Position numbers and translations under genes: made by a program. Of a DNA stretch of 64,000 bases, positions 35,430 through 51,554 are shown piece after piece. Numbering within the stretch: the first letter of the stretch is position 1; every line of letters starts with the position of its first letter. The stretch lies in the IMG/VR virus record IMGVR_UViG_3300009104_001827, positions 124,001 to 188,000 of that record; one strand, written 5' to 3'. The notes below the pieces were generated by a model. It had not been told where the DNA came from, did not search any database, and was given only the letters and a program-made list of their open reading frames with translations.

Positions 35430-36704
35430 ATGAAAAGGAGAACCTTTATAGAGGTTGGCGCAGCAACTGGAATTGGCAGTCTCACCTTGCCCCAATTGCT
35501 TGCGTCAAATAAAAGAGCACTTAATGATAATAAATCGATTATCGTTGTTTGGATGAATGGAGGGCCGTCACATCACGAAACCTTTGACCCTAAACCATAC
35601 GCACCCCAACCATTCAAGGGGCACTTTGAGGCGATCCCTACAGTTGCAGACGGGATACAGCTCCCCGAGCATCTAGTTAAGTGCGCGGACTGCATGGACA
35701 AATGGGCCATAATTAAGGGGCTATACCACGACAACAACAACCATAGCTCTGCGCATGAAATTATGCACTCTGGCTACAAAGCCAAGGAGCCTAATCAGCA
35801 ACAAAATTTTTACCCCAGCATAGGATCAACAATTGCGGAACATGCCAAGAGAGACGGCGAAGTTCCCCCATATGTTGTTATCCCCAACCACAGCAGAGGA
35901 ACTCGTCCCGGATATTTGCCTCATGAATTCGGGCCTTATGAAACAAAGACTCGCCCTTCTTCTAGCGAAACATACAAAGACACGAATTTCACACTCAACG
36001 AATCACTAACCATTAATAGAGTTGACAATAGAGGAGATTTATTAAAATCCTTCGATAACTTTAGGTCGGTTTTAGATAAATCTGGAATGACGAAGTCCAT
36101 TGATGAATTCAACATAAAAGCTCAAGGACTACTTACTAGCGGGCAAGCAGCAAAGGCCTTCGATATTGAAAAAGAATCTACATTCACAAAAGATTTGTAT
36201 GGCCCAGGATTCGGCCGTGATTTACTACTCGCAAGGCGCTTAGTTGAAAACGGCGTAAAAATGGTTACCGTAAAAACTCCCTTTGGCTGGGACACTCATC
36301 AAGCGAGCGACAAAAGCATGGGAAACAAGAACCTGCCCCAGTTCGACGTGGCGTTTAGCGCGTTAATTAACGACCTTCATTCCAGAGGCATGATGGAAGA
36401 CGTTATGGTTGTAGCTTGGGGTGAATTCGGTAGAACCCCAAAGATTAATGCCAATGGAGGCAGAGACCATTGGTCTCGCTCAATGGCTGCCGCCATCGCA
36501 GGAGGAAAGGTGAGCGGGGGCGTTGTCGCCGGAGAAAGCGACAAAACTGGCTCAGAGCCCATAACAGGAATAACCCCTCCAGACGTACTAGTTACGCTTT
36601 ATGACCACATGGGAATAAACCCAAAACACAATTACTATGATCACAGCGGGAGACCTCACCCAATAATTAACTCAGGTAGAATACTTACAGAATTATTCGT
36701 ATAA
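35430..36704 (+). CDS. DUF1501-family protein with Tat signal
   Basis: MKRRTFI Tat motif; MNGGPSHHETFDPKP, GWDTH, WGEFGRTPKINANGGRDHW; GTGTAA at 35415-35420. Confidence 0.9.
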   Translation: MKRRTFIEVGAATGIGSLTLPQLLASNKRALNDNKSIIVVWMNGGPSHHETFDPKPYAPQPFKGHFEAIPTVADGIQLPEHLVKCADCMDKWAIIKGLYHDNNNHSSAHEIMHSGYKAKEPNQQQNFYPSIGSTIAEHAKRDGEVPPYVVIPNHSRGTRPGYLPHEFGPYETKTRPSSSETYKDTNFTLNESLTINRVDNRGDLLKSFDNFRSVLDKSGMTKSIDEFNIKAQGLLTSGQAAKAFDIEKESTFTKDLYGPGFGRDLLLARRLVENGVKMVTVKTPFGWDTHQASDKSMGNKNLPQFDVAFSALINDLHSRGMMEDVMVVAWGEFGRTPKINANGGRDHWSRSMAAAIAGGKVSGGVVAGESDKTGSEPITGITPPDVLVTLYDHMGINPKHNYYDHSGRPHPIINSGRILTELFV

Positions 36705-36713
36705 TATAAACAA

Positions 36714-38678
36714 ATGAAAAATAAAAAACTCAAACAACTATCCATTATTAATTTAATTATAGGATATATAACATTAATGCTATTTAGCTTATTAGTAATA
36801 CTGAACCAACCGACAGAATTGATGGCTGAAGATCAAGACCTTACAGTGGTCAAGGCTTCTGACGAAGATAAAACGGAAGCCCTAGAGCCGCCAGACGAAG
36901 TTAGCGCAAAAGAAAAAGAAATAATCTATATAGACGGGCACCCAACAACATATATTAGAGACAATAGTATAGGCGTAGATAGGCTATCAGGTGTAATTAT
37001 TGATAACGTACCCAACAGACTGGTCGAAAGGGACGACCTAAGGGGTAATATCGCGATAGCAAGAGACACTAGAAATGAAAACCTATTAATAGATAGGCGC
37101 GATAATATAATTATTGATGAAACAATTGATAGACACAATTATAGCAATAGGACTGGCGCTAGCGTCGGTGATAGGCTATATGGGGTTCGTAATAACTCTT
37201 TTGTTGATAATAAAAACAATAGAAGAGATCGGTTGGTTGAAGACATTGATGCTGGAATTCTAGATAGGAGGCTAAATGAGGCAAACCCCTTCGAGGAAAA
37301 CACTGAAGAAGTCGGCGAAGACTTTGGATTAGACGGAAACGATTTCGCTGGAGTTACGCTAGCAGAAGACGATGAAGGTGAGTTAGATTTTGATATTGAC
37401 GATTTCAAAAATGCAGAAATGGGCTCAAAAGGCTACGGAGTCGATAAAGGAAACCTGTACGCCTACAACTACCCCAGCCAGGGCGTTGGAGCTGGTATTG
37501 GAAATGCCGGTGTTGGCGCCGCAGCAGGATTTGCGGGCATTGGCGCCGGAGTTGGACAGGCAGTACTCAACGGAGAAACCGTCCCTACCCTAGGAGGAGT
37601 AGGAACATCTCCCATCATTCCCGGCAATCTGGAAGTTACCCCCGAAAACGACAGAGACGGAGATGGGCTTCCCGCCTCAGTTGAATCTCAAATTGGAACC
37701 AACCCAAACAATGCCGATACAGATGGTGACGGCCTAAGCGATGGAGACGAAGTGTTTAGCTATTCTAACCCCCTAGATAAAACAAGCACCCCCCTCGATT
37801 CCGGCTCGGCTCCCCTCCCCCAATTTGGCGGGGTTGGCGGCTTAGTCAGTGGAGCAGGATCAGGTGTTGCGGCCGGCTTGGTAACCGGCATGGTTAAGAA
37901 GCAACTCGGAATTGGAATTGCCCCCAAGGGGTGCGCCGAGTGCGGAGGTGAGTGCAAAGGGCACGGACACGGGCACGGACACGGAAAGCACGAATACGAT
38001 TTGCCGCCCGATGGAGCGTTGCACATTATGATCCATGTCGACGGAAGTGGGAGTATTCTCGCAACCAGGCGCCAGCTGGACATCATGAAGGACACTCTTA
38101 TGAAGGACGCGCTACTTCCCTACTATAATAATGACGAGTCTCTATACAATAAGAGGGTGACCATTATAGATAACTCGGGAGAACGAACGCTGAGATTCTA
38201 TACGGAAGCAGCAAAGAAAGACAATGTTCTAGCGATTGCGTTCCAAGATGAAGCGGCCCCCGATTATCACCTACCCAATTTTAATAAGACCCCACAAAAT
38301 GCGTATAGCGCAGACTTGGGCAAGCTTAGATCGAACCTGAACGGATACGGCGGATTATACAGAGGCATAATGTTCCAAGTGGACAGGGGACGCACTTTTG
38401 CAAAGTCGTTCAAGGAGCTTGTCGAGTGCGCGTGGAATGGAGAGGGGTACCTGGAAAAACCGGGGACGAACCTCAAGAAGTATCACAGAGACAACAACCT
38501 GCACAATATCAAGAATAAGAACGGAATCGTTTTCAGTGATGAGTATCACGCGAAGTCTGAGGGTGATCCACAATACTATTTGGACTTGATCTTCAAGGCT
38601 TCGAAACGAGTGGGTCTGGACCTTCAAGCAAAGGGCGCTGGACTTACGGACGGTAAATATAACCAAAAGATTGATTGA
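36714..38678 (+). CDS. Exported protein with Ca-binding DxDxDG repeats, His-rich linker and vWA-like domain
   Basis: N-terminal hydrophobic anchor; DRDGDG/DTDGDG; CAECGGECKGHGHGHGHGKH; VDGSGS MIDAS-like motif. Confidence 0.65.
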   Translation: MKNKKLKQLSIINLIIGYITLMLFSLLVILNQPTELMAEDQDLTVVKASDEDKTEALEPPDEVSAKEKEIIYIDGHPTTYIRDNSIGVDRLSGVIIDNVPNRLVERDDLRGNIAIARDTRNENLLIDRRDNIIIDETIDRHNYSNRTGASVGDRLYGVRNNSFVDNKNNRRDRLVEDIDAGILDRRLNEANPFEENTEEVGEDFGLDGNDFAGVTLAEDDEGELDFDIDDFKNAEMGSKGYGVDKGNLYAYNYPSQGVGAGIGNAGVGAAAGFAGIGAGVGQAVLNGETVPTLGGVGTSPIIPGNLEVTPENDRDGDGLPASVESQIGTNPNNADTDGDGLSDGDEVFSYSNPLDKTSTPLDSGSAPLPQFGGVGGLVSGAGSGVAAGLVTGMVKKQLGIGIAPKGCAECGGECKGHGHGHGHGKHEYDLPPDGALHIMIHVDGSGSILATRRQLDIMKDTLMKDALLPYYNNDESLYNKRVTIIDNSGERTLRFYTEAAKKDNVLAIAFQDEAAPDYHLPNFNKTPQNAYSADLGKLRSNLNGYGGLYRGIMFQVDRGRTFAKSFKELVECAWNGEGYLEKPGTNLKKYHRDNNLHNIKNKNGIVFSDEYHAKSEGDPQYYLDLIFKASKRVGLDLQAKGAGLTDGKYNQKID

Positions 38679-38703
38679 CTTTTTGCCTCCCCGACAACAC
38701 AAT
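38675..38703 (+). promoter_or_regulatory. sigma70-type promoter for clpP
   Basis: TTGACT, 17 bp, CACAAT; ATG 38711. Confidence 0.5.
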
Positions 38704-38710
38704 ATATTGT

Positions 38711-39448
38711 ATGTCAAACAAAAGTAAGGACCGAACACCAGAAGAGATAGAGGCTAATGTCGAAAAATTAAAAGCCGAAGCATCAAAAGCTCAGGCTGAA
38801 GCTCGGAAAGTTATAGCTGAAGCGGATACCGCAGAGACAAGAGCTCAAAAGGAAAGGTTTGAGTTCGAAAGGTATCAGGAAGAAAGAAAAAAAAGGCTTT
38901 CCGTTGATAGGGAAAATCGCGTATATCGATTCAGTGGTGGGGTAGATAAATCCTCAGTTGAAAAATGCAGAGACGCCCTAACTGAATGGTCGAGATGCTC
39001 TCCAGGGTGTGATATAGAAATTGTATTTGCCTCCCCTGGCGGAGGAATAACTGCGGGGTTTGAATTATTTGACTACATCCAGCAATTAAGATTTGCGGGT
39101 CACAAAATCACAACAGGATCTTTAGGTATGGCTGCATCTATGGCGGGCATATTGCTTCAAGCTGGCGAACATCGCTGGATTGGGCACCAATCTTGGATAC
39201 TAATACATCGGGCAGCCTTTGGGGCCATTGGTAAAACTTTTGAAATTGAAGATGAGGTGGAATTAATTAAAAGAATTGAAGAAAGGATAATTGAAATTTT
39301 CACCTCTAGATCAAATCTTACAAAATTAAAAATTAAAAGAAATTGGAACAGAAAAGATTGGTGGATAAATGCAGACGAAGCGCTAGACATGGGTCTTGTT
39401 GACGAAGTTAGAGGCAAACTGCCAGAGGGAAAAAACATCGGCGGCTAG
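38711..39448 (+). CDS. clpP: ClpP-family serine protease
   Basis: SPGG, GMAASMA (Ser), ILIHR (His), DWWINADEALDMGLVD (Asp); coiled-coil N-terminal extension. Confidence 0.88.
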   Translation: MSNKSKDRTPEEIEANVEKLKAEASKAQAEARKVIAEADTAETRAQKERFEFERYQEERKKRLSVDRENRVYRFSGGVDKSSVEKCRDALTEWSRCSPGCDIEIVFASPGGGITAGFELFDYIQQLRFAGHKITTGSLGMAASMAGILLQAGEHRWIGHQSWILIHRAAFGAIGKTFEIEDEVELIKRIEERIIEIFTSRSNLTKLKIKRNWNRKDWWINADEALDMGLVDEVRGKLPEGKNIGG

Positions 39449-39544
39449 CGGACGATTCCGTTCTAAAGTCCATTCCTAAAACACACGCCCCAGCAGACAG
39501 GGGCAACAAAAGCCAAGGTTTCCTCACCTAGACATACATTAACC

Positions 39545-39573
39545 TTGACAATTAAGCTTAAATCGGGTAGACT
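39545..39573 (+). promoter_or_regulatory. sigma70-type promoter for polymerase operon
   Basis: TTGACA, 17 bp, TAGACT. Confidence 0.7.
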
Positions 39574-39592
39574 ATATACAATTCCGATTAAG

Positions 39593-40318
39593 ATGATTCC
39601 TCTATTTACTTCTCACTACAGCATTGGCAAAAGCATATTAACGCTCGACCACCCAGACAAGCAAACCGAGGGCGGCTCAACCAGCGTATTTAGTATCGCT
39701 CAAAAGAACAACCTAAAAGAAATATTTTTGGTAGAAAACTCACTGACCGGATTTCCTCAGGCGCTCACGATATCAGCGGAGCTAGGAATACAGTTATGCT
39801 TCGGCCTTTTGCTCAAAATCTGCGAGCAAGACCATAAGATTATCGTCTTCGCAAAAAACTCAAAAGGATGCAAAAGATTAAATCAAATATACAGCGAAGC
39901 GTTCGCGGGAGATAAAGAATGTATCTCAACCGAAAACTTAAAAAAATTCTGGAACAGTAAGGAGCTTATGCTCTGCATACCGTTTTACGACTCTTTTATA
40001 TATAAAAATATAATGACGTTTGACAGTTGCACGCCAGACCTGTCCGCGTTCAGTCCGCTATTTTTTCTCGAAGAAAACAACCTACCTTTTGACAATCTCG
40101 TTCGCCAGAAGGTCGAAGCATATGCCGAATCAAGAGGGCATGACACGCAGTTAGTTAAATCCATTTACTACGAAAACCAAGAAGACGCAGAAGCCTTGCA
40201 GGTCTATAAATGCATATGCAGCAGAAGGTTCGGAAAGAGCTCTCTGTCAAAACCGAATCTAGACCACTTCGGAAGTGATGAATTTAGCTTCGAGAGCCTA
40301 CTTAAGAAGAAAAAATGA
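39593..40318 (+). CDS. Stand-alone PHP domain of DNA polymerase III alpha
   Basis: SHYSIGKS, IIVFAKNSKG..RL match DnaE PHP; metal ligands look degenerate. Confidence 0.8.
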   Translation: MIPLFTSHYSIGKSILTLDHPDKQTEGGSTSVFSIAQKNNLKEIFLVENSLTGFPQALTISAELGIQLCFGLLLKICEQDHKIIVFAKNSKGCKRLNQIYSEAFAGDKECISTENLKKFWNSKELMLCIPFYDSFIYKNIMTFDSCTPDLSAFSPLFFLEENNLPFDNLVRQKVEAYAESRGHDTQLVKSIYYENQEDAEALQVYKCICSRRFGKSSLSKPNLDHFGSDEFSFESLLKKKK

Positions 40319-40827
40319 AATACAAGCTATACAATTCAGGGAAAACCTTCCTTGACAGATCCCCTATTTCAGGCAGGGGCGTTTTCGCCTCTGAACCCTT
40401 TCGCAGGGGAGAACTCATAGAGCAATGCCATTTCATTATACCAGAACAAGATAAAGGCGGCAGAGATAAGGAACTCTTGAGATACATGTTTGCCATAACC
40501 AATGAAGAATCAATAAAATCCTCCAAGGAAACATTCCTTAAGATTTTTCTAGGAAATCTAATCGACAACAAGAAGGACGCGGGCAGCGAGCGCTCACAAG
40601 CAATAAAGAACTGCGTTGAGCTTGGATATAAATCGCTAGACAAACTATTCGATTCGGCAGTTGTACTCGGAAACGGAATGATATTTAATCATTCAGACAA
40701 ACCAAATATTGATTATTGTTTTAATGAAGACGACTTCTGCTTCGACTATAATGCATCTAAAGATATACAACAAAACGAAGAGCTCGTAATTAATTACGGC
40801 AACCCAGAAAGGGGAGATATAAAATGA
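40315..40827 (+). CDS. SET-domain protein-lysine methyltransferase
   Basis: SPISGRGVFA, IFNHSDKPN, DIQQNEELVINYG. Confidence 0.88.
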   Translation: MKYKLYNSGKTFLDRSPISGRGVFASEPFRRGELIEQCHFIIPEQDKGGRDKELLRYMFAITNEESIKSSKETFLKIFLGNLIDNKKDAGSERSQAIKNCVELGYKSLDKLFDSAVVLGNGMIFNHSDKPNIDYCFNEDDFCFDYNASKDIQQNEELVINYGNPERGDIK

Positions 40828-41465
40828 AAGAATCGCTATTAAGATTTAAAGACAAACAGAAATATCTTATTTTTGATTATGAAACCTGCAACCTCAACCT
40901 CATGTCAAAAGATAATAAACCTTGGCAGCTTGCATTTCTTTTAGTTCAGGGCAATAAAATATTAGACAAAGCCGACTACATACTCTCTTGGCCAGACATC
41001 AACGTCTCTAAAGACGCAGCCAGAATAACAGGCTTTTCCTACGCCAAGTATAATAAGAGAAAAAGCTGCCCGCTGAAGGCGTTAGATCACTTCGAAAAAT
41101 ATTTATACGATAAAAAAATCCTAACCGTCGGACACAACATACTCGGATTCGACTTATATATCCACAATATCCACCGCAAGCTTTGCGGGAAAACCTCCGA
41201 CTACTCATATATAGAAAATACGCTAGACACCGTGTGCCTTGGGAGGGCTATTAAAGCGGGTATAAAGAGGCAGAAGGGGACAGACCTACTATCGTGGCAG
41301 TATAGGCTATTAAACCACCGCCAAAAAGGCCTGAAGGTAACACTAAAGCAATGCTGCAAGGACTACGGAATAAACTACAATCCGGAAAAATTGCATGATG
41401 CGCTTTACGACATAGAGAAAAACAACGAAGTATTTCAAAAAATGCTATGGGAGGTGGAGGTATGA
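40824..41465 (+). CDS. dnaQ: DEDDh 3'-5' exonuclease (epsilon-like)
   Basis: FDYET, GHNILGFD, LHDALYD. Confidence 0.88.
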   Translation: MKESLLRFKDKQKYLIFDYETCNLNLMSKDNKPWQLAFLLVQGNKILDKADYILSWPDINVSKDAARITGFSYAKYNKRKSCPLKALDHFEKYLYDKKILTVGHNILGFDLYIHNIHRKLCGKTSDYSYIENTLDTVCLGRAIKAGIKRQKGTDLLSWQYRLLNHRQKGLKVTLKQCCKDYGINYNPEKLHDALYDIEKNNEVFQKMLWEVEV

Positions 41466-44017
41466 TATCCAACTTCAAAAAATACAAAGACTGCATGCCC
41501 CCAGGTGTACTGCTTCCGAATATTAAGATCAATAAGAAATATTACGACGAGCTCGAAATCCCGAGCGATTCATCCAATTTCGACTTCCTTAGACACTTAT
41601 GCCTAAAGGGAGTAAAAGAAAAAAATATTAACAAGAAAAACGATGACGAAAAGCAGACCTATTATTCTAGAGCAAAAATGGAACTCAAAATCCTTGACGA
41701 GCTTGGGTTTATCGACTACATTTTACTTAACTGGGATATTCTTGAGTATTGTCATAATAACAATATTCCTACTGGGCCTGGCCGTGGCTCGGCGGCTGGC
41801 TCGCTTGTTCTATATCTGATAGGCGTAACAAAAATAGATCCGGTAGAACATAATCTCTTTTTTGAGAGATTTGTCTCTAAAAGCAGGGCAAAATCCACAG
41901 AACATAAGGGAGTAAAATACCTTGACGGAGGACTACTGGCGGATATTGACAATGATATAGCCTACGAGCATAGGCAAGAAGTAATAAAATACATCGAGGG
42001 AAAACACCCAAATAGCACTGCAAAGATATTAACTTTAAATACGCTTAGCAGCAAACTCTGCCTTAGGGAATGCGGGAAAATAGTAGGAGAATTAGACGAG
42101 CAGGAAATTTCACTAATTACGGACGAGATTCCTAAGCAATTTGGCAAAGTAGACCCTCTTAGCGATTCCTATAATAAAAGCGAAAAAATTAAGGAATGGG
42201 CCGACGCCAATCCGCGCATATTCGGTGTTGCGAAAAAACTTGAAAACCTGAACAAGAACACGGGAGTTCATCCCTCCGGCATCGCAATTGCCGCAGAAAA
42301 TATCTCAAACATATGCCCAATACAAAAGACGAAAGACGGAAGCCTTATTACCGGGTACGATATGAATTGGGTTTCAGAATTAATGGTTAAATTCGACATA
42401 CTCGGACTTCGAACATTAAGCGTTATCAATACGACCTGCAAGCGAGTGGGCATATCGGCTGAGGACATAGACATAAATGACGAAGGGGTCTATCTCCCGT
42501 TGCAAGACCTTCGCCACCCTCATGGGCTTTTCCAAATTGAGGCAGATACAGACTATAAGGTTTGCAAGAAAATTCAGCCCAAAAATATAGAAGAGCTGAG
42601 CGCAGTACTGGCAATCGCTCGCCCAGGTGCATTGGACTTCTTAGATAATTATCACAATCACGTTTCCACGGGCAACTTCCAAAGCATACATCCCTTCTTC
42701 GACGACATCCTCTCGCACACCGGCGGCATCCCACTGTATCAGGAGCAGTTAATGCAAATGGCCGTAAAGGTTGGATTCACGCTTGACGAATCGGAGCAAA
42801 TAAGAAGAATAGTGGGTAAAAAGAAAATCAAAGAAATGCCGATATGGAAAGAAAAAATTAAAGATAAAATATCCGAAAACGGAGTTGATAAAGAAGCCGG
42901 AGACGTCCTATGGAGAGTGGCAGAAGATAGCGCAAACTATTCGTTCAACAAGAGTCACTCAATCGCATACTCCACTCTATCAGCCTGGACAACATATCTA
43001 AAATTCAAACACCCCCAACAGTTCTTCTTGTCATTGCTTCAGATGACTAGATTTGAGCCCTGCCCTCAAGACGAGATTGGCAAAATCAGTCAAGAGCTAT
43101 CTTCTTTTGGCATTAAACTATTGCCTCCAAATTTGGCAAAGTCAAAAATGGACTTCTCGATAGAGGGTCCAGATATACGCTATGGATTAAATAGCATTAA
43201 GGGAATTAGCGAAAAGTCGCTTAAGTCTTTAATGGAATTCAGAAAAGAGAGCGGAACCTCAAAATATGACATGTTCATGTCTGCCAAGCAGGCCGGACTG
43301 AATATAGGTACGGTTTGCGCCCTCATCCAGGCCGGAGCTCTCTCCAATTACAACGGCAGCAGGCCGCTGCTAGTATTGGAGGCTCAAGTATTCAACTCCC
43401 TGACAGAGAGGGAGAAAAGAAACTTTGTCGAACTAGGCCCAAAGTTTGAGTATAGATTGCTAGATTCTATAGTCCACGCAAGAGACAACGATCTTGTCGG
43501 GGACGACGGGAGACCCCTCTTTAAGGAGTCTAGATTTCAGACCTTCAAGAAAAAGTACGAGCCCTATAAGCAAATTTACATAAAAAATAGCAAGTCTCAG
43601 AGTTTCGCAGACTGGTATTTTGAGAATCAGCTATTAGGATATTCTTATAGCCAAAACCTAAGGTCTGTATTCTCAAGAAAACCTGAAACATTTGTAAATT
43701 ATAGCGACTACGAATTAATGGGCAAGAATTCCGCAGGAAGAATTATAGGGATGGTGCAGGATTCTTTTGTGAGGACCAGTAGAAGCGGAAATAAGTATAT
43801 GAAAATTGAAATTGCAGACGAGAGAGGAGTATTTCAATGCATGCTATGCAATAGTCGAAGAGGTAACAGGCTGGACGAATTCTTGGAAGACAACGACGTT
43901 CCAGATAAAAACAGTATAGTAATTGCCTATGGCTCCAAAGGGGAAGACGCCTTCTTTCTGGAAGACATGAAAATTATGGATGAGCAAATTTACATGAAGC
44001 TCGCAGACCTCAAATAG
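41462..44017 (+). CDS. dnaE: DNA polymerase III alpha catalytic core lacking PHP
   Basis: GPGRGSAAGSL, DIDND, GVHPSG, KFDILGL, YQEQLM, SFNKSHS, C-terminal OB fold; ATGA overlap at 41462. Confidence 0.95.
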   Translation: MISNFKKYKDCMPPGVLLPNIKINKKYYDELEIPSDSSNFDFLRHLCLKGVKEKNINKKNDDEKQTYYSRAKMELKILDELGFIDYILLNWDILEYCHNNNIPTGPGRGSAAGSLVLYLIGVTKIDPVEHNLFFERFVSKSRAKSTEHKGVKYLDGGLLADIDNDIAYEHRQEVIKYIEGKHPNSTAKILTLNTLSSKLCLRECGKIVGELDEQEISLITDEIPKQFGKVDPLSDSYNKSEKIKEWADANPRIFGVAKKLENLNKNTGVHPSGIAIAAENISNICPIQKTKDGSLITGYDMNWVSELMVKFDILGLRTLSVINTTCKRVGISAEDIDINDEGVYLPLQDLRHPHGLFQIEADTDYKVCKKIQPKNIEELSAVLAIARPGALDFLDNYHNHVSTGNFQSIHPFFDDILSHTGGIPLYQEQLMQMAVKVGFTLDESEQIRRIVGKKKIKEMPIWKEKIKDKISENGVDKEAGDVLWRVAEDSANYSFNKSHSIAYSTLSAWTTYLKFKHPQQFFLSLLQMTRFEPCPQDEIGKISQELSSFGIKLLPPNLAKSKMDFSIEGPDIRYGLNSIKGISEKSLKSLMEFRKESGTSKYDMFMSAKQAGLNIGTVCALIQAGALSNYNGSRPLLVLEAQVFNSLTEREKRNFVELGPKFEYRLLDSIVHARDNDLVGDDGRPLFKESRFQTFKKKYEPYKQIYIKNSKSQSFADWYFENQLLGYSYSQNLRSVFSRKPETFVNYSDYELMGKNSAGRIIGMVQDSFVRTSRSGNKYMKIEIADERGVFQCMLCNSRRGNRLDEFLEDNDVPDKNSIVIAYGSKGEDAFFLEDMKIMDEQIYMKLADLK

Positions 44018-44028
44018 TGTAAGTTATC

Positions 44029-46557
44029 ATGATGGAGCACAAACCAAACTTTACCCCCAGAGCGCAGAGGGCAATAGAAATATCAAAAAAAACCGCCAAA
44101 GACATGGGCTCGAAGACCGTTGCGCTCGAGCATCTTTTCCTGGGCATACTGCACCTCAAAGCAGGAGTAATCCACGAAGTGCTCTTGGGAGTGGGAATCA
44201 GCCCTGCTAATCTTATTACTGCCATTTCCAATAGAATAAAGGAAGAGGCAGTCTTCCACGCCTCTGAAGACACTCCCGAATTTGATCCAAAATTCAAGCA
44301 GGTACTAGAAATAGCTGCACTAATTAGCAAAAATTTTGGGCATGATTATGTAGGGATAGAGCACATGCTTTTAGCAATGCTAAAATATGACGGTTCTCCG
44401 ATTAATGAGTATTTCAAACTCCTCGACATACCCGAAGATCTGATTATTGAACAAATTAAAAACTATTTTCAGCTTACAGTGCCGGAGGTCCCGATCATAG
44501 GAGGGTTCCACCCTTTCTTTATAAATCCCCAAGGAAACCCCCAGAACCAAGCAGGGGCAGAGCCCTCCCAGAGTAAGCCCCGGCGCCAAACGATGATCGA
44601 TAAGTACGGGGTTAATTATGTGGAAATGGCGGCAGATAATAAATTTGACGAAATAATAGGAAAAGAATCCGAAATCCTGGAGGTATGTGAAATTTTATGC
44701 AGGAGAATAAAAAACAACCCAGTACTCCTGGGAGACCCTGGCGTTGGGAAGACTGCAATCGTAGAGGGCCTCGCGCAGTCTATAGTAAAAAGCTCCGCAC
44801 CAGAACACCTGCTTGATAAGCAGATATACGGGATAGATCTAGCCTCTATGATTGCGGGAACCAAATACAGGGGGCAATTTGAAGAAAGGCTCAAAGGAAT
44901 GCTTGAAGAAGCGATAGAAGACGATAGGATAATTTTATTCATTGACGAGCTGCACACCTTAGTCGGCGCTGGCAGCGCAGAAGGAACAATGGATGCGGCA
45001 AACATATTAAAACCCCTCCTTTCAAAAGGAGCCATAAGATGCATTGGAGCGACAACAAACAAAGAATACAAAAAAAGCATACTTAAAGACGGTGCGCTTG
45101 ATCGAAGATTTCAGCCCGTAACATGCAGGCAACCAAGCGAAAAGGAAACCCTAGAGATACTTAAGGGGGTAAAACATAAATATGAGGAATTCCATTACGT
45201 AGACTACGACCAAGAGTGCCTTAAGCTCATAGTAGATTTGGCAGCAAGATACATTCCGTCAAAGCAATTCCCTGACAAAGCGCTAGACATATTAGATCAA
45301 GTAGGCGCAAAAGTAAAAATAAAATCTTTTGTCCGGCCTAAGAAAAGCAAGGCAATGGAGCTAGAACTGGAAGACCTCATGAGAGAAGAAGATATCCTAC
45401 GAGGTCAAGGAATAGATTGCTCAGGAGTAAACAAAAAACAAGAAGACCTTCTAGAAAAATACTCAAAGTCCCTGCAGAACTGGGCAAACAAAAACTTTAA
45501 AAACAGAAAACGAATAAGGCCTCAGGATATTTACAGAACCGTCTCCCAACTCACCAACGTGCCCATGGCAGAACTCTCAAGGACTGACGCCCAGAGATTT
45601 CTCAACCTTGAAGATAAAATGAAATCAAAGATTATTGGGCAAGACCATGCGGTCGCGACAATCTGCAAAGCAATACTACGCTCAAAATCTGGACTCAGAA
45701 ATGAGAGCAAACCAATCGGCAGCTTTCTGCTTCTAGGTCAGACCGGTTTGGGTAAAACCTATACCGCAAAAACGATAGCCTCATCCCTTTTTGGGAGTAG
45801 TTCTGAAATAATTGCGGTAGACATGAGCGAGTATTCTGAAAAAATTTCCAGCACAAGACTATCGGGCGCTGCACCAGGCTACGTTGGCTACGAAGAGGGT
45901 TCCGCGCTAATAGACAAAATCACAAAAAACCCATATAGCGTAGTATTATTTGATGAAATAGAAAAGGCACACCCAGACGTAATCCAGTCTCTACTACAGG
46001 TCCTCGAGGAGGGTAGATTAACAGACGGACTAGGAAGGGTTGGCGATTTTACAAATAGCATAATTATCCTAACAGGCAACATAGGCTCGGAAATTGCCGG
46101 ACAGGGCGGTAGTATGGGATTCGCAGCAGCAGAAGACCAGCATTCTATTATTGTTGACAAAATTACCGAAAAGGCGAGCCAAGCACTTAGGCCAGAGTTT
46201 GTAAACAGGATAACAGAAGTTATAGTTTTTAATTCATTTAGTAAAGAAGATTTTTCCAAGATATTAAACTTAGAGCTCAAACCATTAAGGAAGAAACTCA
46301 AGGAAAGAGACATATCCCTACGCATAGGAAAGAATCTAAGAAGTTCAATTATAGAGAAAACTCAAGATTCAAACTATGGCGCCAGGCCTGTAGCAAGAAT
46401 AATTCAAAAAGAAATAGAGGACGAACTGGCTGAACTCCTAATTAACGGGAAGCTCAAAGACGGCGAAAAAATCTCTTTCACTGGGTCCGTCGGAGAAGTA
46501 AGTTATTCCATTACGGCAAAACCGGCTTCTGAGGATCAAACGCCTCCTCTTCCTTAA
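44029..46557 (+). CDS. clpC: ClpC/ClpA-type Hsp100 AAA+ ATPase
   Basis: Clp N-domain, GDPGVGKT, FIDELH, short M domain, GQTGLGKT, FDEIEKAH, SMGF loop. Confidence 0.9.
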   Translation: MMEHKPNFTPRAQRAIEISKKTAKDMGSKTVALEHLFLGILHLKAGVIHEVLLGVGISPANLITAISNRIKEEAVFHASEDTPEFDPKFKQVLEIAALISKNFGHDYVGIEHMLLAMLKYDGSPINEYFKLLDIPEDLIIEQIKNYFQLTVPEVPIIGGFHPFFINPQGNPQNQAGAEPSQSKPRRQTMIDKYGVNYVEMAADNKFDEIIGKESEILEVCEILCRRIKNNPVLLGDPGVGKTAIVEGLAQSIVKSSAPEHLLDKQIYGIDLASMIAGTKYRGQFEERLKGMLEEAIEDDRIILFIDELHTLVGAGSAEGTMDAANILKPLLSKGAIRCIGATTNKEYKKSILKDGALDRRFQPVTCRQPSEKETLEILKGVKHKYEEFHYVDYDQECLKLIVDLAARYIPSKQFPDKALDILDQVGAKVKIKSFVRPKKSKAMELELEDLMREEDILRGQGIDCSGVNKKQEDLLEKYSKSLQNWANKNFKNRKRIRPQDIYRTVSQLTNVPMAELSRTDAQRFLNLEDKMKSKIIGQDHAVATICKAILRSKSGLRNESKPIGSFLLLGQTGLGKTYTAKTIASSLFGSSSEIIAVDMSEYSEKISSTRLSGAAPGYVGYEEGSALIDKITKNPYSVVLFDEIEKAHPDVIQSLLQVLEEGRLTDGLGRVGDFTNSIIILTGNIGSEIAGQGGSMGFAAAEDQHSIIVDKITEKASQALRPEFVNRITEVIVFNSFSKEDFSKILNLELKPLRKKLKERDISLRIGKNLRSSIIEKTQDSNYGARPVARIIQKEIEDELAELLINGKLKDGEKISFTGSVGEVSYSITAKPASEDQTPPLP

Positions 46558-48116: not shown

Positions 48117-49298
48117 TTATACAATTATGCCTGTGAGAACCTTGTCGTCAAGGATCATGCGACCCTCTTCGATAGCGCCATAGTAACCAATCTTTTGTGA
48201 TCGGGATACCCATTGGTCGTCAACGACGAGATCGAACTCAGAACCACTTTCCGCGTCGGTTGCGACAGCGCGAAGCATGGATTCCTTGGATAGATCGATA
48301 CCGAGGCAGATTTCCTCTTTGTCTCCGTCGAACGTTTCGTCGGTGGCGTTTTTAACATCAGCATCGCCGACTCCGCCATCGCCGTGCTTGTCCCAGTCCT
48401 TATCGCCAGAAGCAGTGTCAAACACTGTGTTCCACTTTTGCTCCTTACCCATTTCGTTGATTTCCATGATGGAAACACCATAGAACTCAGGAATGCCAGC
48501 GGAATTAAAGATCTTATCTCTAAAGCTGTCGGTTCCAGCAATGTCTCCGCCGCCCGCGATTTTACCGCCGCCGCCATCAGAATGAGTTACATTACTTCTT
48601 GTGTTAATTGGGTTATAAGCCAATCCACGCAGTTCCTCAACGATTTCGGGAGAAACGATGAGGTCAGTAACCCCACGACCCCTGCGGTCGGCAGGAGTGC
48701 CTTTCGTCCACGAAGTGTTAATTCTCTTAGCGAGAGTAAACAGTTTGTTAAGGTCTGCCAAAAGGAAGCGATCCTTCGAATGCGACCGGAAGACATGCTT
48801 CAGTCCATTCGTTTCGGCATTGGCCAAGGCAGTCATAATCATAACCGCAGAAGTCTTCTCTTGCTTGAGAAGGATTTCCTGGGCAATTCTTGTAAATGTC
48901 TTACTAACGACATCAAGCCTGGAACGTTGAGCGAATCTCTTGTCAAAAGAAACCGCACTATCCAAACGATAGGTCGTAAATTTCATTTCCTGTTGGACAG
49001 GAGCCACGTGATTGGTCGGAAGGCCGCCAGGGGAGTTTTGACTCCAGATCTGGATGTAGTCTTCGTCTGTAATATCGTGGTAAAGGTCCAACGGAATACT
49101 AGCGTTGTCTTCAGAACCAAACTGAAGAGAGCTAAATAGGTTGCTCAGCGTAGGAGCCGTGTTAACGACTTCGGCCAAAAGAGGTCCGATGAAATCGCCG
49201 AGGGCCGCTTGGGCTTCATAAGCTACATCGCGGTTCTTGGAAGCCATAGCTTTAATAAGCTCGACTTGCTCTGGAGTTCTTTCGATTTTTATTTCCAT
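48117..49298 (-). CDS. Major capsid protein
   Basis: 393 aa in protease-decoration-capsid order; TDLIVSPEIVEELR, GYYGAIEEGRMILD; strong SD, terminator. Confidence 0.85.
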   Translation of the reverse strand: MEIKIERTPEQVELIKAMASKNRDVAYEAQAALGDFIGPLLAEVVNTAPTLSNLFSSLQFGSEDNASIPLDLYHDITDEDYIQIWSQNSPGGLPTNHVAPVQQEMKFTTYRLDSAVSFDKRFAQRSRLDVVSKTFTRIAQEILLKQEKTSAVMIMTALANAETNGLKHVFRSHSKDRFLLADLNKLFTLAKRINTSWTKGTPADRRGRGVTDLIVSPEIVEELRGLAYNPINTRSNVTHSDGGGGKIAGGGDIAGTDSFRDKIFNSAGIPEFYGVSIMEINEMGKEQKWNTVFDTASGDKDWDKHGDGGVGDADVKNATDETFDGDKEEICLGIDLSKESMLRAVATDAESGSEFDLVVDDQWVSRSQKIGYYGAIEEGRMILDDKVLTGIIV

Positions 49299-49316: not shown

Positions 49317-49949
49317 TTAGAAAGAAATCTTGCAAAGCCACTTGGTTCCGTCCTCATTCTTGGCGATAATTCTGCCAACGTCACCCGCTGCGGCATCGTC
49401 GACCTTAAATAGGCCTTCCTTGCCAGCACCACCAACGGTAAGTCCCTTTCCAACTCCACCATCTCCATCTAGGGCGTCGTTCGTGAGAAGGACCATGCCT
49501 CTAGTTAGAATGGGAACAGTTTGTCCAGGAAGTACGCATTGAAGTTCGTCTTTCTTTACGGGATAACGAAGAAGATTTTCTCCGTTTTCGTCGTAAGCCA
49601 ATGTTTCCTTAAGTGTGATACCTAAAGCGGGGTTGCCCGCTGCAGATGATGCCTTAACGACATTCATATCATTCACTGGATACGCGTTATAACCAACATA
49701 GGCGCTCGAAGGTTCGTTGCCTAAGTATGCTCTAAACGGAGCTCCAGTACTCGCTAGGCCAGAGGGGAGATCACCTGGTAACTGGGCGTTATCTTCCGCC
49801 GCAACCACAACTCCCGAGTCCCAGTCTTTATCGGCAGTACCTCCTGGCACCAACGCTTGAAAGTTGGCCAGTCCGTCTACCTTCAACGAAAAGAGGTTAA
49901 TAACCTCGTGCTCGCTATAATCTCTGAATGGTTCTAATCTTTTTGCCAT
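49317..49949 (-). CDS. Capsid decoration/cement protein
   Basis: Immediately upstream of capsid; ALGITL, VPILTRG beta-tulip-like pattern. Confidence 0.6.
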   Translation of the reverse strand: MAKRLEPFRDYSEHEVINLFSLKVDGLANFQALVPGGTADKDWDSGVVVAAEDNAQLPGDLPSGLASTGAPFRAYLGNEPSSAYVGYNAYPVNDMNVVKASSAAGNPALGITLKETLAYDENGENLLRYPVKKDELQCVLPGQTVPILTRGMVLLTNDALDGDGGVGKGLTVGGAGKEGLFKVDDAAAGDVGRIIAKNEDGTKWLCKISF

Positions 49950-49967: not shown

Positions 49968-51554
49968 TTAATATGTCACCTTCACACTGTCCCGAAAAGC
50001 TTTCGCGAATCTCTCGCGGAGGCTCTCTTCAGTTTCAATGGATTCTCCATTGTTATTAGGAAGGCTTGCGTCTTCAGAAGTCGCTTGGTCGAGGGACTGC
50101 TCCACATCTGCGGTAGCCTCAGCCTCTTCAACAGCTTCTTCTTTAACGCTTTCTTCGGTAGTAGCCTTAGATTCCAATCTCTTGGTAACTTCGGCCTCGA
50201 TCTTGGCTTCCATTTCGTCGGCCAATTTTTGTAAATACTCTTTATTCTTTGTCTTGAATAATACCGCAAGCTTTTCTTGATATTCTGCGAAAGCTTCGTC
50301 GGCTAGATCCAGAGAAGAAACTTCCGATGCGACGATCTTCTTGTCTTCGCTGTCAAGCTCATACAATTCCTCAATCGCCTCCATACGGGAATCAAATCTC
50401 GCACGCGCTTCTCTTTCAGCATTCTCTTCCTCGAGACCTTCTAGCTTGGTTTCGGTTTCGGTAAGCTTCTCCTGAAGTTCCGAGAGTGTTTTTGCCAGCT
50501 CATCTTTCTGAGTCTGGGCTTCGGCTTGGTCAGCTTTTGCTTGTTCGATCTGGTCGACATACTCTTGGCTTTTCTCGCGAATGGCGTCATGAAAAACCTT
50601 AGTAATGTTGGCAATAGCTTCATCCGAAAAGTCCTTCGCAGCCGCCTTTTCAGAAAGGAGCTGTTCAATATCTTTTAATAGTTCTTGCTTTTCCATAGTA
50701 TTAAGAAAAAATTCGTGGTCAGATTGTATTACATTAGTGGATTCTAAATGAGAACTTTTTTCTTTATCAGTATAATGCTCCCTAACGCGTTGATCGTCAA
50801 CTTTTTCTTTATCCTCCGCCAAAGATTCTTTAGTTAGGACTCCAGTAACATCTGCTGCGGGGGTATTAGTGAACCCTATCCCCAAGGGGTATATCTCACC
50901 AACAATAAGCCTATTGACCTTTTGCCCATCTTCAAGTTCGCCGCTACCACCAAATGATTTTAAATGAGGGGTCAAGGCTTCCACCTCAGCAGGATCAGTA
51001 ATAACCTCCGAGTCCCCAATGTTACCGTTGCCGACGGCAACAGCAAATTCGTTAAAGCCTATCTCCCAACTTGCGGAAACACTATTATATGATTCGCTTT
51101 CAGGATCAGAAGAAGCGAGCAGTACATCCGCAAACTCCGGCGACGCAGTCTTATATACTACTGCCCCCAAAGATATGTTGAACGGATCGCTTGAGCTTGC
51201 ATCCACTTCGCTTAAGATTTCTCCCTCACCCTTGTACTCGGAAAACTCTGCAGACACGATATGGCCAACGATATTGTCCTTTTGGTGTTCTATGTTTGTG
51301 GGCTTATGAATAAAATAATCCTTAATTGCCATCGCCGACATAGTGTCAATCCCATCCCCGTTTTGATTAAATTTATTAACCACCGCAGCATTAAATGCCA
51401 CACCGACCAGATCGATATTTCTGTCTAGATCTATACTATCCGGAATTAATTCCTTAAGGGGCTCAAGCGATGCAGTCGAAATATTCATGTCCTCAACAAC
51501 AGAAGAGGCAGTAACAACGCTTTTGAATTTTGCAGTATATTTAAATTTTTCCAT
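49968..51554 (-). CDS. Prohead protease fused to scaffold
   Basis: NQNGDG, KPTNIEH, SASWEI, GIGFTNTPA; acidic coiled-coil C-terminal half. Confidence 0.85.
   Translation of the reverse strand: MEKFKYTAKFKSVVTASSVVEDMNISTASLEPLKELIPDSIDLDRNIDLVGVAFNAAVVNKFNQNGDGIDTMSAMAIKDYFIHKPTNIEHQKDNIVGHIVSAEFSEYKGEGEILSEVDASSSDPFNISLGAVVYKTASPEFADVLLASSDPESESYNSVSASWEIGFNEFAVAVGNGNIGDSEVITDPAEVEALTPHLKSFGGSGELEDGQKVNRLIVGEIYPLGIGFTNTPAADVTGVLTKESLAEDKEKVDDQRVREHYTDKEKSSHLESTNVIQSDHEFFLNTMEKQELLKDIEQLLSEKAAAKDFSDEAIANITKVFHDAIREKSQEYVDQIEQAKADQAEAQTQKDELAKTLSELQEKLTETETKLEGLEEENAEREARARFDSRMEAIEELYELDSEDKKIVASEVSSLDLADEAFAEYQEKLAVLFKTKNKEYLQKLADEMEAKIEAEVTKRLESKATTEESVKEEAVEEAEATADVEQSLDQATSEDASLPNNNGESIETEESLRERFAKAFRDSVKVTY

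What the first reader, a model, noticed from the sequence alone, without database searches (positions are those of the whole stretch)
38711..46557. Phage encodes both halves of a ClpCP-type ATP-dependent protease
Seen: ClpP with full triad, separate from the prohead protease at 49968; Hsp100 with short M domain and MGF loop (46114-46122). Established: the [LIVM]GF loop docks Hsp100 onto ClpP and is absent from ClpB. The two genes bracket the polymerase operon but have different promoter classes. Inference: an autonomous degradation machine that could remove host defence or regulatory proteins, with the ClpP coiled-coil extension acting as gate or adaptor.
Basis: partly seen in the sequence, partly recalled or inferred. 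Interest (0 to 1): 0.75.

Follow-up and report, generated by a model that had tools for sequence, protein, structure and literature searches.

The report
Phage ClpC and separate ClpP-like protease
An uncultured 211-kb marine phage really does encode a ClpC-type unfoldase and a ClpP-fold protease. However, the two genes are inherited independently and the protease lacks the surface ClpC docks onto, so the unfoldase most likely borrows the host's ClpP rather than forming an autonomous phage protease.

Summary
Both genes are real and sit at the stated coordinates. The gene at 44029-46557 is a ClpC-type Hsp100: Clp_N domain, two intact AAA+ rings, short M domain, and an MGF loop at 46114-46122 that aligns with the B. 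subtilis ClpC VGF loop. The gene at 38711-39448 has a ClpP fold, an invariant Ser143/His166/Asp216 triad and a roughly 60-residue N-terminal helix.

The pairing is not supported. ClpC is a core gene, fixed directly after PolIII alpha in about 30 related phage loci, and its x-G-F loop is invariant. Ten relatives' whole records (two at least 90% complete) and the three closest relatives examined have no ClpP gene. The ClpP-like gene is an accessory gene in a hypervariable slot. It also occurs in phages with no Hsp100, including mycobacteriophage Gaia and two marine phages of 158 and 168 kb.

The ClpP-like protein lacks the N-terminal gating loops. Only 3 of the 12 residues that form the E. coli ClpP docking pocket remain hydrophobic.

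Most likely the phage ClpC docks on host ClpP and the ClpP-like protease works independently. It is not the capsid protease: relatives with the same head module lack it, and Omegavirus phages encode both. The complex prediction gave no answer.

The parts
38711..39448 (+). ClpP-like S14 serine protease, 245 aa; an accessory gene in the variable slot upstream of the polymerase operon
   Evidence: PF00574 2e-27. phrog_94 1.7e-50 over the full length. Foldseek matches to solved ClpPs at target-normalised TM-score 0.8-0.88. All NCBIfam ClpP equivalogs and NF045542 score below their cut-offs.
38738..38914 (+). N-terminal A/E/K/R-rich helix (residues 10-68), standing where canonical ClpP has its axial gating loops and helix A
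   Evidence: AF2 model shows helix 10-68 at pLDDT 79-90. It is conserved in all 25 homologues and in Gaia gp118. Heptad a/d positions are 71% hydrophobic plus Ala. PDB ClpPs align only from query residue ~70.
39137..39139 (+). Catalytic Ser143 (in GMAASM)
   Evidence: Aligned to the ClpP active-site Ser. Invariant in alignment A1. Codon checked.
39206..39208 (+). Catalytic His166
39356..39358 (+). Catalytic Asp216 (in RKDWW)
39486..39505 (.). G+C-rich hairpin in the 96-nt gap between the ClpP-like gene and the PHP gene, followed by a sigma-70-like site at 39545-39573
   Evidence: Consensus scan only; sequence read. Suggests, but does not show, that the ClpP-like gene is transcribed separately from the polymerase-ClpC operon.
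39545..40318 (+). PHP-like domain protein (a separately encoded PolIII alpha PHP domain); the true start is probably downstream of the listed TTG
   Evidence: PF02811 0.0011, below cut-off; phrog_405 DNA polymerase 3e-8. Conserved in relatives.
40315..40827 (+). SET-domain protein inside the polymerase operon (present in only some relatives)
   Evidence: PF00856 6e-15.
40824..41465 (+). DnaQ-like 3'-5' exonuclease
   Evidence: PF00929 8e-8
41447..44017 (+). DNA polymerase III alpha core (no PHP domain)
   Evidence: PF07733 8e-61, PF17657, PF14579
44029..46557 (+). ClpC-type Hsp100 unfoldase, 842 aa; last gene of the polymerase operon (11-nt gap after PolIII alpha)
   Evidence: Pfam domains. 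B. subtilis ClpC 650 bits, with D1-M-D2 matched in one stretch. phrog_4871 6e-226. The position after PolIII alpha is conserved in ~30 loci.
44731..44754 (+). D1 Walker A (GDPGVGKT). D1 Walker B (DE) is at 44944-44949 and the D1 pore loop (KYRG) at 44863-44874.
   Evidence: Invariant in 27 phage ClpCs; codons checked.
45337..45558 (+). Short M (middle) domain, about 70 residues
   Evidence: Aligns without large gaps to the B. subtilis ClpC M domain. ClpB matches break here, leaving ~50 ClpB residues unmatched.
45736..45759 (+). D2 Walker A (GQTGLGKT). The D2 pore loop (GYVG) is at 45877-45888 and D2 Walker B (DE) at 45952-45957.
46114..46122 (+). MGF tripeptide of the ClpP-docking loop
   Evidence: Aligns with VGF of B. 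subtilis ClpC. G697 and F698 are invariant in 27 family members, and x-G-F is present in all full-length viral Hsp100 homologues of the 79-sequence alignment (two rows truncated or empty).
35430..38678 (+). Rest of the variable accessory slot between NUDIX and PHP: a DUF1501 protein (35430-36704) and a TSP3-repeat protein (36714-38678)
   Evidence: The slot content differs among relatives: DUF1501, TSP3, PSCyt2/PSD1, RNR, beta-oxidation genes, ClpP-like.
49968..51554 (-). Candidate prohead protease fused to a scaffold-like coiled coil (528 aa)
   Evidence: Atlas leads to Peptidase_S77/S78/YonD_N for residues 1-240. Invariant H90, H98, S160 and S162, with helices 311-466. No HMM hit.
49317..49949 (-). 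Capsid cement/decoration protein candidate
   Evidence: Atlas Phage_cement, score 0.97
48117..49298 (-). HK97-fold major capsid protein
   Evidence: Atlas structure TM-scores 0.56-0.71 to Phage_capsid_4/YonB clusters
51600..53471 (-). Terminase large subunit
   Evidence: PF03237 2e-10

Best explanation
Two independent modules lie side by side; they are not a dedicated pair.

(1) ClpC is a core gene of this lineage of uncultured marine phages of about 200 kb. It is most likely co-transcribed as the last gene of the PHP-(SET)-DnaQ-PolIII alpha operon. It is a complete ClpC-type double-ring unfoldase with an intact ClpP-docking x-G-F loop. That loop is invariant in relatives that carry no ClpP gene of any kind. 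I infer it is kept for docking onto the host's ClpP. The phage would thus supply its own substrate-selecting motor to the host peptidase early in infection, probably to remove host or phage regulatory, defence or replication proteins.

(2) The ClpP-like protein is a divergent S14 peptidase. Its triad is intact, and by sequence so are its handle region and Asp/Arg ring sensor. Its N-terminal gate loops are replaced by a roughly 60-residue Ala-zipper-like helix, and its docking pocket is largely polar. It is a mobile accessory gene in a hypervariable slot. It also occurs in many phages without any Hsp100. I infer it acts on its own, or with a host factor, as a self-gated peptidase of the early/replication phase, not as ClpC's chamber and not as the capsid protease.

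Shown: gene anatomy, motif conservation and gene distributions. Inferred: host ClpP docking, the independence of the two proteins, and the substrates.
For: ClpC anatomy and ClpC-type loop.

Conservation and synteny:
- Walker, pore-loop and GF residues are invariant in 27 phage ClpCs. x-G-F is present in all full-length viral homologues aligned.
- ClpC follows PolIII alpha directly in L003-L033, L117/L118, L121, L122, L129 and L130-L133.

Absence of ClpP in relatives:
- No PF00574 match in 10 relatives' whole records, including G004 (90% complete) and G005 (93%).
- The three closest syntenic relatives examined (ClpC 64-68% identical) lack a ClpP-like gene in the slot.
- The window's own genome has a single PF00574 gene, a single AAA_2 gene, and no ClpS or MecA.

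ClpP-like without an Hsp100:
- G011 (91% complete), G013 (100% complete) and mycobacteriophage Gaia have no Hsp100.
- 306 mycobacteriophage records match the ClpP-like protein. Mycobacterium is not among the ten organism groups named for the ClpC search; 12 further groups were not listed.

Docking surface:
- The 12 E. coli pocket residues come from the ClpAP cryo-EM preprint 10.1101/820209.
- Mapped through the printed PDB alignments, only Y62V, M92L and F112W stay hydrophobic.
- R95 and E103 are invariant in the family.
- N-terminal gate loops 1-18 have no counterpart.

Unequal conservation: ClpP-like 76% against ClpC 43%, RecA 41% and PolIII alpha 61% between the window and L117.

Not the capsid protease:
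- Relatives with the same TerL, p528, p210 and MCP genes lack it.
- Omegavirus Zelink has a capsid maturation protease (gp13) as well as the ClpP-like gp152.
- In other phages its neighbours are replication genes or auxiliary metabolic genes, not head genes.
Against: - No binding or activity data exist, and complex prediction returned 'no answer'.
- The host and its ClpP are unknown.
- The pair does recur in at least three further sublineages, with the ClpP-like gene in the same slot upstream of the polymerase-ClpC operon. Contigs from a metatranscriptomic library cover both genes.
- The pocket argument rests on sequence alignment to E. coli, B. subtilis and S. aureus ClpP, not on a solved or oligomeric structure.
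- Many relatives' records are incomplete (54-79%).
- Gaia has no annotated prohead protease in its head module. A capsid role for the family is therefore not excluded everywhere.
Confidence: 0.55

Rival explanations
1. One reading: ClpC and the ClpP-like protein form an autonomous, host-independent ATP-dependent protease. They would dock through the MGF loop or through a non-canonical contact involving the N-terminal helices.
For: - Both genes are intact and lie 4.6 kb apart in the same early/replication region.
- The combination recurs in L117/L118/L129 and G015, and probably in the P0020/P0191 phage.
- Contigs from a metatranscriptomic library cover both genes.
- By sequence, the ClpP-like protein keeps the triad, the handle region and the Asp/Arg ring sensor.
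Against: - The two genes have independent distributions.
- The docking pocket is mostly polar and the gate loops are missing.
- Seven 60-residue helices would emerge from the apical face, where the hexamer must sit. This is an inference from the model.
- ClpC loops show no signature linked to presence of the ClpP-like gene.
- Conservation is uncorrelated: 76% against 43%.
- The complex prediction was uninformative.
Confidence: 0.15
2. ClpC works without any peptidase, as a remodeller or disaggregase tied to replication. It could assemble or recycle the phage replisome or strip host proteins from DNA. The GF loop would be a relic.
For: ClpC is invariably the gene directly after PolIII alpha in ~30 loci, and most likely shares its operon. 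AAA+ unfoldases are known to remodel replication proteins without degrading them; cites ClpA acting on RepA.
Against: G697 and F698 are invariant across proteins as little as 38% identical, and x-G-F is universal in the viral homologues. Such conservation argues against a relic. ClpB-type disaggregases lack this loop and have a long M domain, which this protein does not.
Confidence: 0.15
3. The ClpP-like protein is a head-maturation or scaffold-associated protease encoded away from the head module, as its best PHROG name and the RefSeq names suggest.
For: - phrog_94 'head maturation protease' scores 1.7e-50.
- RefSeq names the mycobacteriophage homologues this way.
- NF045542 and NF045540 give weak hits.
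- The A/E/K-rich helix resembles scaffold domains.
- Gaia has no annotated head protease.
Against: - The NF045542 score of 77 is below its cut-off of 120.
- GenBank curators call the same proteins 'ClpP-like protease'.
- Zelink has a separate capsid maturation protease.
- Relatives sharing this phage's head genes lack it.
- The head module has its own protease-scaffold candidate.
- Its neighbours are replication or metabolic genes.
Confidence: 0.07
4. Hybrid chamber. A ring of the ClpP-like protein stacks on a host ClpP ring, as ClpP1 does on ClpP2 in mycobacteria. ClpC or host unfoldases would dock on the host ring, and the phage ring would change cleavage or gating.
For: - The handle region aligns without gaps, and the Asp/Arg sensor motif is kept in the family consensus, while the docking pocket is lost.
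- This pattern is expected for a ring that never binds an ATPase (established knowledge of ClpP1P2; not tested here).
- The high conservation of the ClpP-like protein would fit a constraint imposed by a conserved host partner.
Against: The host is unknown, and the N-terminal helices are not explained by this model.
Confidence: 0.08

Closest known systems
ClpC of Firmicutes (B. subtilis ClpC/MecB, PDB 3j3s; S. aureus MecA-ClpC-ClpP, PDB 9gi1)
   Same: N domain, two AAA+ rings, short M domain, D2 helix-loop-helix with [VM]-G-F, and D2-small domain. 650 bits over the full length, with D1-M-D2 in one stretch.
   Different: - It is phage-encoded and fixed behind PolIII alpha.
- It has a roughly 30-residue Pro/Gln-rich insertion between the N domain and D1, and a short C-terminal tail.
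- No MecA or ClpS adaptor is present in the genome.
- Its peptidase partner is unknown.
Canonical bacterial ClpP (E. coli 1tyf, B. subtilis 3ktg, S. aureus 3qwd)
   Same: Same fold (target-normalised TM-score 0.8-0.88), Ser-His-Asp triad, handle region and C-terminal strand.
   Different: - Residues 1-26 (gate loops and the start of helix A) are replaced by a ~60-residue helix.
- Only 3 of 12 docking-pocket residues remain hydrophobic.
- It has a 3-residue insertion near F82, a 2-residue deletion before F112 and an extra Lys before the catalytic Asp.
- It scores far below every NCBIfam ClpP cut-off (for example TIGR00493: 74 against 309).
Non-structural 'ClpP-like protease' of mycobacteriophages (Gaia gp118; Omegavirus, e.g. 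Zelink gp152; Faith1 gp90; phrog_94)
   Same: 33-39% identity over the full length, including the N-terminal helix. Encoded outside the head module; in Gaia it lies between a helicase/nucleotide hydrolase and a DnaQ-like exonuclease.
   Different: The hosts are actinobacteria, and those phages have no Hsp100. No function has been published that I could find.
ClpP-related head maturation proteases (NCBIfam NF045542; protease-capsid fusions NF045540)
   Same: Same S14 core; weak HMM matches at 1e-21.
   Different: It scores below the family cut-offs, lies outside the head module, has its helix N-terminal rather than a C-terminal scaffold or capsid domain, and is absent from relatives with the same capsid genes.

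Membership tests
Hsp100/ClpC subfamily (ClpP-coupled class I AAA+ unfoldase) | Two AAA+ modules with Walker A/B motifs and pore loops | tested here: met
   GDPGVGKT / DE / KYRG in D1 and GQTGLGKT / DE / GYVG in D2; Pfam AAA, AAA_lid_9 and AAA_2.
Hsp100/ClpC subfamily (ClpP-coupled class I AAA+ unfoldase) | Clp_N amino-terminal domain | tested here: met
   PF02861 1.6e-10; residues 7-120 align with the B. subtilis ClpC N domain.
Hsp100/ClpC subfamily (ClpP-coupled class I AAA+ unfoldase) | Short M domain (about half the length of ClpB's) | tested here: met
   Single continuous alignment to ClpC 157-808. ClpB alignments split, leaving ~50 ClpB residues unmatched.
Hsp100/ClpC subfamily (ClpP-coupled class I AAA+ unfoldase) | [LIVM]-G-[FL] ClpP-docking loop in D2 | tested here: met
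   MGF 696-698 aligns with VGF of ClpC. GF is invariant in 27 phage ClpCs.
Hsp100/ClpC subfamily (ClpP-coupled class I AAA+ unfoldase) | Physical docking on a ClpP ring and ATP-dependent substrate delivery | not testable with these tools
   Complex prediction against the phage ClpP-like protein gave 'no answer' (score 0.05). Host ClpP is unknown.
Bona fide ClpP (proteolytic subunit of ATP-dependent Clp protease) | ClpP/crotonase-like fold with a Ser-His-Asp triad | tested here: met
Bona fide ClpP (proteolytic subunit of ATP-dependent Clp protease) | N-terminal axial gating loops (E. coli residues 1-18) | tested here: not met
   PDB ClpPs align only from chain residue ~27, which corresponds to query residue ~70. 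Residues 10-68 form one long helix. The role of the loops is described in 10.1101/820209.
Bona fide ClpP (proteolytic subunit of ATP-dependent Clp protease) | Hydrophobic apical pocket for the IGF/LGF loop (E. coli L23, L48, F49, A52, Y60, Y62, F82, I90, M92, F112, L114, L189) | tested here: not met
   The equivalents are T91, E92, R95, E103, V105, Q125 or F128, G136, L138, W156, G158 and R234. L23 is not alignable. Only 3 stay hydrophobic, and R95 and E103 are invariant in the family. This rests on sequence alignment.
Bona fide ClpP (proteolytic subunit of ATP-dependent Clp protease) | Score above the curated family cut-offs | tested here: not met
   TIGR00493 74 against 308.6; NF001368 84 against 249; all other ClpP models are also below their cut-offs. 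The Pfam domain cut-off is met.
Bona fide ClpP (proteolytic subunit of ATP-dependent Clp protease) | Heptameric rings stacked into a tetradecamer | not testable with these tools
   The handle region aligns without gaps, and the family consensus keeps D-R before the catalytic Asp. The oligomer itself was not modelled.
ClpP-related phage head maturation protease (NF045542) | Score above the family cut-off, and a position in the head module next to portal, scaffold or capsid genes | tested here: not met
   77.4 bits against a cut-off of 120. The gene lies in the replication/accessory region. Relatives with the same head module lack it. Zelink has a separate capsid maturation protease.
Coiled-coil ClpP-like proteases of large phages (phrog_94 in part; mycobacteriophage 'ClpP-like protease') | Full-length similarity including the N-terminal helix; an invariant triad; encoded outside the head module | tested here: met
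   phrog_94 1.7e-50, residues 16-246. 39% identity to Gaia gp118 over residues 9-233. 25-sequence alignment. Genomic contexts.

The most novel reading that the evidence does not exclude
The phage carries a complete, host-independent protease. The ClpC hexamer would couple to a ClpP-like chamber through a non-canonical interface: seven N-terminal helices replacing gate loops and hydrophobic pockets. This would be a new way of joining an Hsp100 to an S14 peptidase.
Probability: 0.12. Interest if true: 0.8.

Novelty: new variant of a known kind. Interest (0 to 1): 0.45.

Why it matters
If the phage ClpC docks on host ClpP, this lineage of abundant marine phages redirects the host's main degradation chamber with its own substrate-selecting motor. 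That host-takeover strategy has not, as far as my literature searches show, been described for phages. It is directly testable with purified proteins.

Separately, the coiled-coil ClpP-like proteases are a large family with no published function that I could find. More than 1,200 metagenomic proteins match, as do hundreds of mycobacteriophage records. The family keeps a catalytic triad but has lost the features that couple ClpP to ATPases. Working out how it is gated would add to what is known about self-compartmentalised proteases.

A practical point: RefSeq's name 'head maturation protease' for these proteins is probably wrong in at least some phages.

Tried and rejected
- **Megablast of the region against GenBank phages:** no match. 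There is no close cultured relative; TerL is at most 27% identical to those of Bacillus phages.
- **Complex prediction** (ClpP-like residues 60-245 in three copies, plus ClpC residues 520-740): score 0.05, 'no answer'. I did not use it as evidence.
- **AF2 model of the 528-aa head protein:** pLDDT 50.7, too poor for a fold search. Pfam, PHROG and NCBIfam gave nothing even at permissive E-values.
- **Promoter and terminator scan:** not above shuffled sequence, so no promoter classes can be assigned.
- **Literature searches** for phage-encoded ClpP, ClpC or Hsp100 and for mycobacteriophage ClpP: nothing relevant.
- **A corrected early conclusion:** I first concluded that only this phage has the ClpP-like gene in the slot. 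Searches showed the gene recurs in several sublineages.
- **'Prophage or host gene' reading:** rejected. The record is a 211-kb virus contig rated 100% complete, and the whole neighbourhood is syntenic in other viral contigs.
- **Search for adaptors or a second unfoldase in the genome** (ClpS, MecA, a second AAA_2 gene): none found.

Full report
**What the window is.** The window is bases 124001-188000 of a 211,117-bp IMG/VR virus record that CheckV rates 100% complete. It has no nucleotide match among GenBank phages. Its terminase is at most 27% identical to those of cultured phages. Near-identical DNA occurs in marine metagenomes from several studies, including a 148.5-kb contig that is 98.7% identical over 38600-44500. 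It is therefore an uncultured marine phage of about 200 kb.

**Gene map around the finding**. The + strand carries RecA, DnaB, a primase-like gene, PD-(D/E)XK and NUDIX genes. A variable stretch follows: a DUF1501 protein (35430-36704), a TSP3-repeat protein (36714-38678) and the ClpP-like gene (38711-39448).

Next comes a tight operon. It comprises a PHP-like gene (39545-40318), a SET-domain gene (40315-40827), a DnaQ-like exonuclease (40824-41465), PolIII alpha (41447-44017) and the Hsp100 gene (44029-46557, 11 nt after the PolIII alpha stop).

The head module converges on this operon from the minus strand:
- TerL (51600-53471).
- A 528-aa protein (49968-51554).
- A cement-like protein (49317-49949).
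- An HK97-fold capsid protein (48117-49298).

**Checking the observation: the Hsp100.**
- It has Clp_N, AAA, AAA_lid_9, AAA_2 and ClpB_D2-small domains.
- Its best solved relatives are B. subtilis and S. aureus ClpC. D1, the M domain and D2 match in one continuous stretch. ClpB and Hsp104 need two stretches and leave about 50 M-domain residues unmatched. The M domain is therefore ClpC-sized.
- MGF (residues 696-698, nt 46114-46122) aligns with the VGF of ClpC's ClpP-docking loop.
- Walker A and B motifs and pore loops of both rings are intact.

**Checking the observation: the ClpP-like protein.**
- It matches PF00574 and has a ClpP fold (AF2 pLDDT 82.5; Foldseek target-normalised TM-score 0.8-0.88 to solved ClpPs).
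- Ser143, His166 and Asp216 align with the catalytic triad and are invariant in 25 homologues.
- The 'coiled-coil extension' is N-terminal. It is a single helix, residues 10-68, rich in A/E/K/R, with an Ala-rich heptad register.

**Checking the observation: the two weaker points.** The claim about promoter classes could not be substantiated. The 'prohead protease at 49968' is plausible but rests only on leads.

**Comparative genomics of ClpC.** A scan of viral contigs with ClpC returned the best 80 of the 594 loci that encode a relative (79 distinct). About 25 of them (ClpC 39-63% identical) keep the block PHP-(SET)-Exo-PolIII alpha-ClpC, followed by the same head genes. None carries a ClpP-like gene within 10 kb.

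A Pfam CLP_protease search of ten of those relatives' whole records found nothing. Two of the ten are 90% and 93% complete. The three closest relatives examined in the wider metagenome collection (ClpC 64-68% identical, fully syntenic) also lack it. In its place they carry other accessory genes, such as DUF1501, TSP3 and PSCyt2/PSD1.

Yet the x-G-F tripeptide is present in every full-length viral homologue in the 79-sequence alignment, two rows of which were truncated or empty. G697 and F698 are invariant in the 27-sequence family alignment. A docking loop conserved this strictly in phages with no ClpP of their own points to the host's ClpP as the partner.

**Comparative genomics of the ClpP-like gene.** It belongs to a large family: more than 1,200 metagenomic proteins, many from marine samples. 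All members examined have the N-terminal helix.

Within this phage lineage it is patchy:
- It occupies the same variable slot in L119 (83% identical) and in L117/L118/L129 (76%), and sits right after NUDIX in L127 (74%).
- It is missing in equally close relatives such as L003 and L121.
- Between the window and L117, the ClpP-like protein is 76% identical. PolIII alpha is 61%, DnaB 55%, ClpC 43% and RecA 41%. The gene is therefore either exchanged horizontally or under much stronger constraint than ClpC. Either way, the two do not co-vary.

In more distant phages (TerL about 40% identical) it sits among auxiliary metabolic genes such as aldehyde dehydrogenase, saccharopine dehydrogenase, glyoxalase and PhoH. 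It is often followed by a conserved 137-aa ORF. Records of 158 kb (91% complete) and 168 kb (100% complete) carry it without any ClpC. Only G015 has both.

The nearest cultured homologues are the 'ClpP-like proteases' of mycobacteriophages, at 33-39% identity over the full length including the helix.
- In Gaia the gene lies between a helicase/nucleotide hydrolase and a DnaQ-like exonuclease. The complete genome has no AAA_2 protein.
- In Zelink (Omegavirus) a canonical capsid maturation protease sits next to the portal and capsid genes, and the ClpP-like gene lies 75 kb away.

**Can this ClpP-like protein accept a ClpC loop?** The E. coli ClpAP cryo-EM study lists the pocket residues: A52, L48, F49 and F82 from one protomer; L23, Y60, Y62, I90, M92, F112, L114 and L189 from the next. 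It assigns residues 1-18 to the gate (10.1101/820209).

The HMMER alignments to B. subtilis, S. aureus and E. coli ClpP are ungapped through these segments. Using them, the equivalents here are:
- L48 to T91 and F49 to E92.
- A52 to R95 and Y60 to E103 (both invariant in the family).
- Y62 to V105.
- F82 to Q125 or F128 (variable in the family).
- I90 to G136, M92 to L138 and F112 to W156.
- L114 to G158 and L189 to R234.
- L23 falls inside the long helix and cannot be aligned.

Only three positions stay hydrophobic. The gate loops have no counterpart. The helix that replaces them would leave the apical face exactly where a hexamer docks (an inference from the model).

By contrast, the handle region aligns without gaps, and the family consensus keeps the Asp-Arg pair before the catalytic Asp. 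Ring stacking is therefore plausible.

NCBIfam places the protein below the cut-offs of every ClpP equivalog and of the ClpP-related head-maturation model. A direct complex prediction gave no answer and is not used.

**Not the capsid protease.**
- Relatives with TerL 72-81% and capsid protein 74% identical lack the gene.
- The head module has its own candidate. This is the 528-aa protein, with an N-terminal domain resembling S77/S78/YonD_N proteases, invariant His and Ser residues, a long coiled coil and a conserved C-terminus.
- Omegavirus phages encode both kinds of protease.

Gaia lacks an annotated head protease, so a capsid role somewhere in the family cannot be fully excluded.

**Expression.** Contigs from a marine metatranscriptomic library cover parts of the ClpP-like, PHP, exonuclease, PolIII alpha and ClpC genes. 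They carry the same variants as a DNA strain from another study. This is compatible with transcription of both genes but does not prove it, because DNA carry-over is possible. It also says nothing about co-transcription.

A hairpin at 39486-39505 and a sigma-70-like site at 39545-39573 lie between the ClpP-like gene and the operon.

**Conclusion.**
- Best model (confidence about 0.55): a core phage ClpC that uses host ClpP, plus an independently acquired, self-gated ClpP-like peptidase of unknown substrate.
- An autonomous pair: about 0.15.
- A peptidase-free replication remodeller: about 0.15.
- A hybrid phage/host ClpP chamber: about 0.08.
- A head protease: about 0.07.

I found no published work on either phage protein family. 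The finding therefore remains moderately interesting and is readily testable in vitro.

Noticed in passing
window 39545-44017: The phage PolIII alpha is split. A PHP-like domain is encoded as a separate ~250-aa gene, followed by a DnaQ-like exonuclease and an 856-aa core that starts at the NTPase domain. A SET-domain gene (40315-40827) sits inside the operon in this phage and a few relatives only.
   Followed up: partly
window 35430-38678; L122:2672-6007; L130:1-5916; L127:10867-16166: The slot between NUDIX and PHP is a hot spot for accessory genes. These include DUF1501, TSP3-repeat and PSCyt2/PSD1 proteins (domains typical of Planctomycetes-like bacteria, which may hint at the host), ribonucleotide reductase, and in one relative a thiolase / enoyl-CoA hydratase / acyl-CoA dehydrogenase set.
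   Followed up: partly
window 49968-51554 (-): The 528-aa head protein has a conserved N-terminal ~240-residue domain with invariant H90, H98, S160 and S162. A ~150-residue coiled coil, an acidic stretch and a conserved C-terminal tail follow. It looks like a protease-scaffold fusion of the SPbeta YonD type, but no HMM recognises it.
   Followed up: partly
L083:10717-11130 and 10 other loci: A conserved ORF of 126-166 aa with no Pfam match directly follows the ClpP-like gene in 11 distant phage loci. It is absent from the window. It could be a partner or substrate of the ClpP-like protease.
   Followed up: no
A1 alignment, C-termini (e.g. L085, L100, L104): Many ClpP-like homologues end in a poly-Lys/Arg tail of 10-30 residues. 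The window's protein lacks it.
   Followed up: no
window 38711-39448 vs L117:10001-10735: The ClpP-like protein is 76% identical between phages whose RecA, ClpC, DnaB and PolIII alpha are 41-61% identical. This suggests horizontal exchange or unusually strong constraint.
   Followed up: partly
window 53443-54378 (-): The ORF next to TerL has weak C2H2 zinc-finger, HNH-associated-repeat and ERCC4 nuclease matches. It may be a homing-endonuclease-like or packaging-associated nuclease.
   Followed up: no
window 39936 and 40197-40383: One metatranscriptome contig (run X8, record 8) carries a 1-nt insertion after 39936 and an odd back-joint at 40383/40197 within the PHP/SET genes. This is probably an assembly or strain artefact.
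   Followed up: no
window 44029-46557, residues ~150-185: ClpC has a Pro/Gly/Gln-rich insertion of about 30 residues between the N domain and D1. It has no counterpart in B. subtilis ClpC and is poorly conserved among the phage homologues.
   Followed up: no
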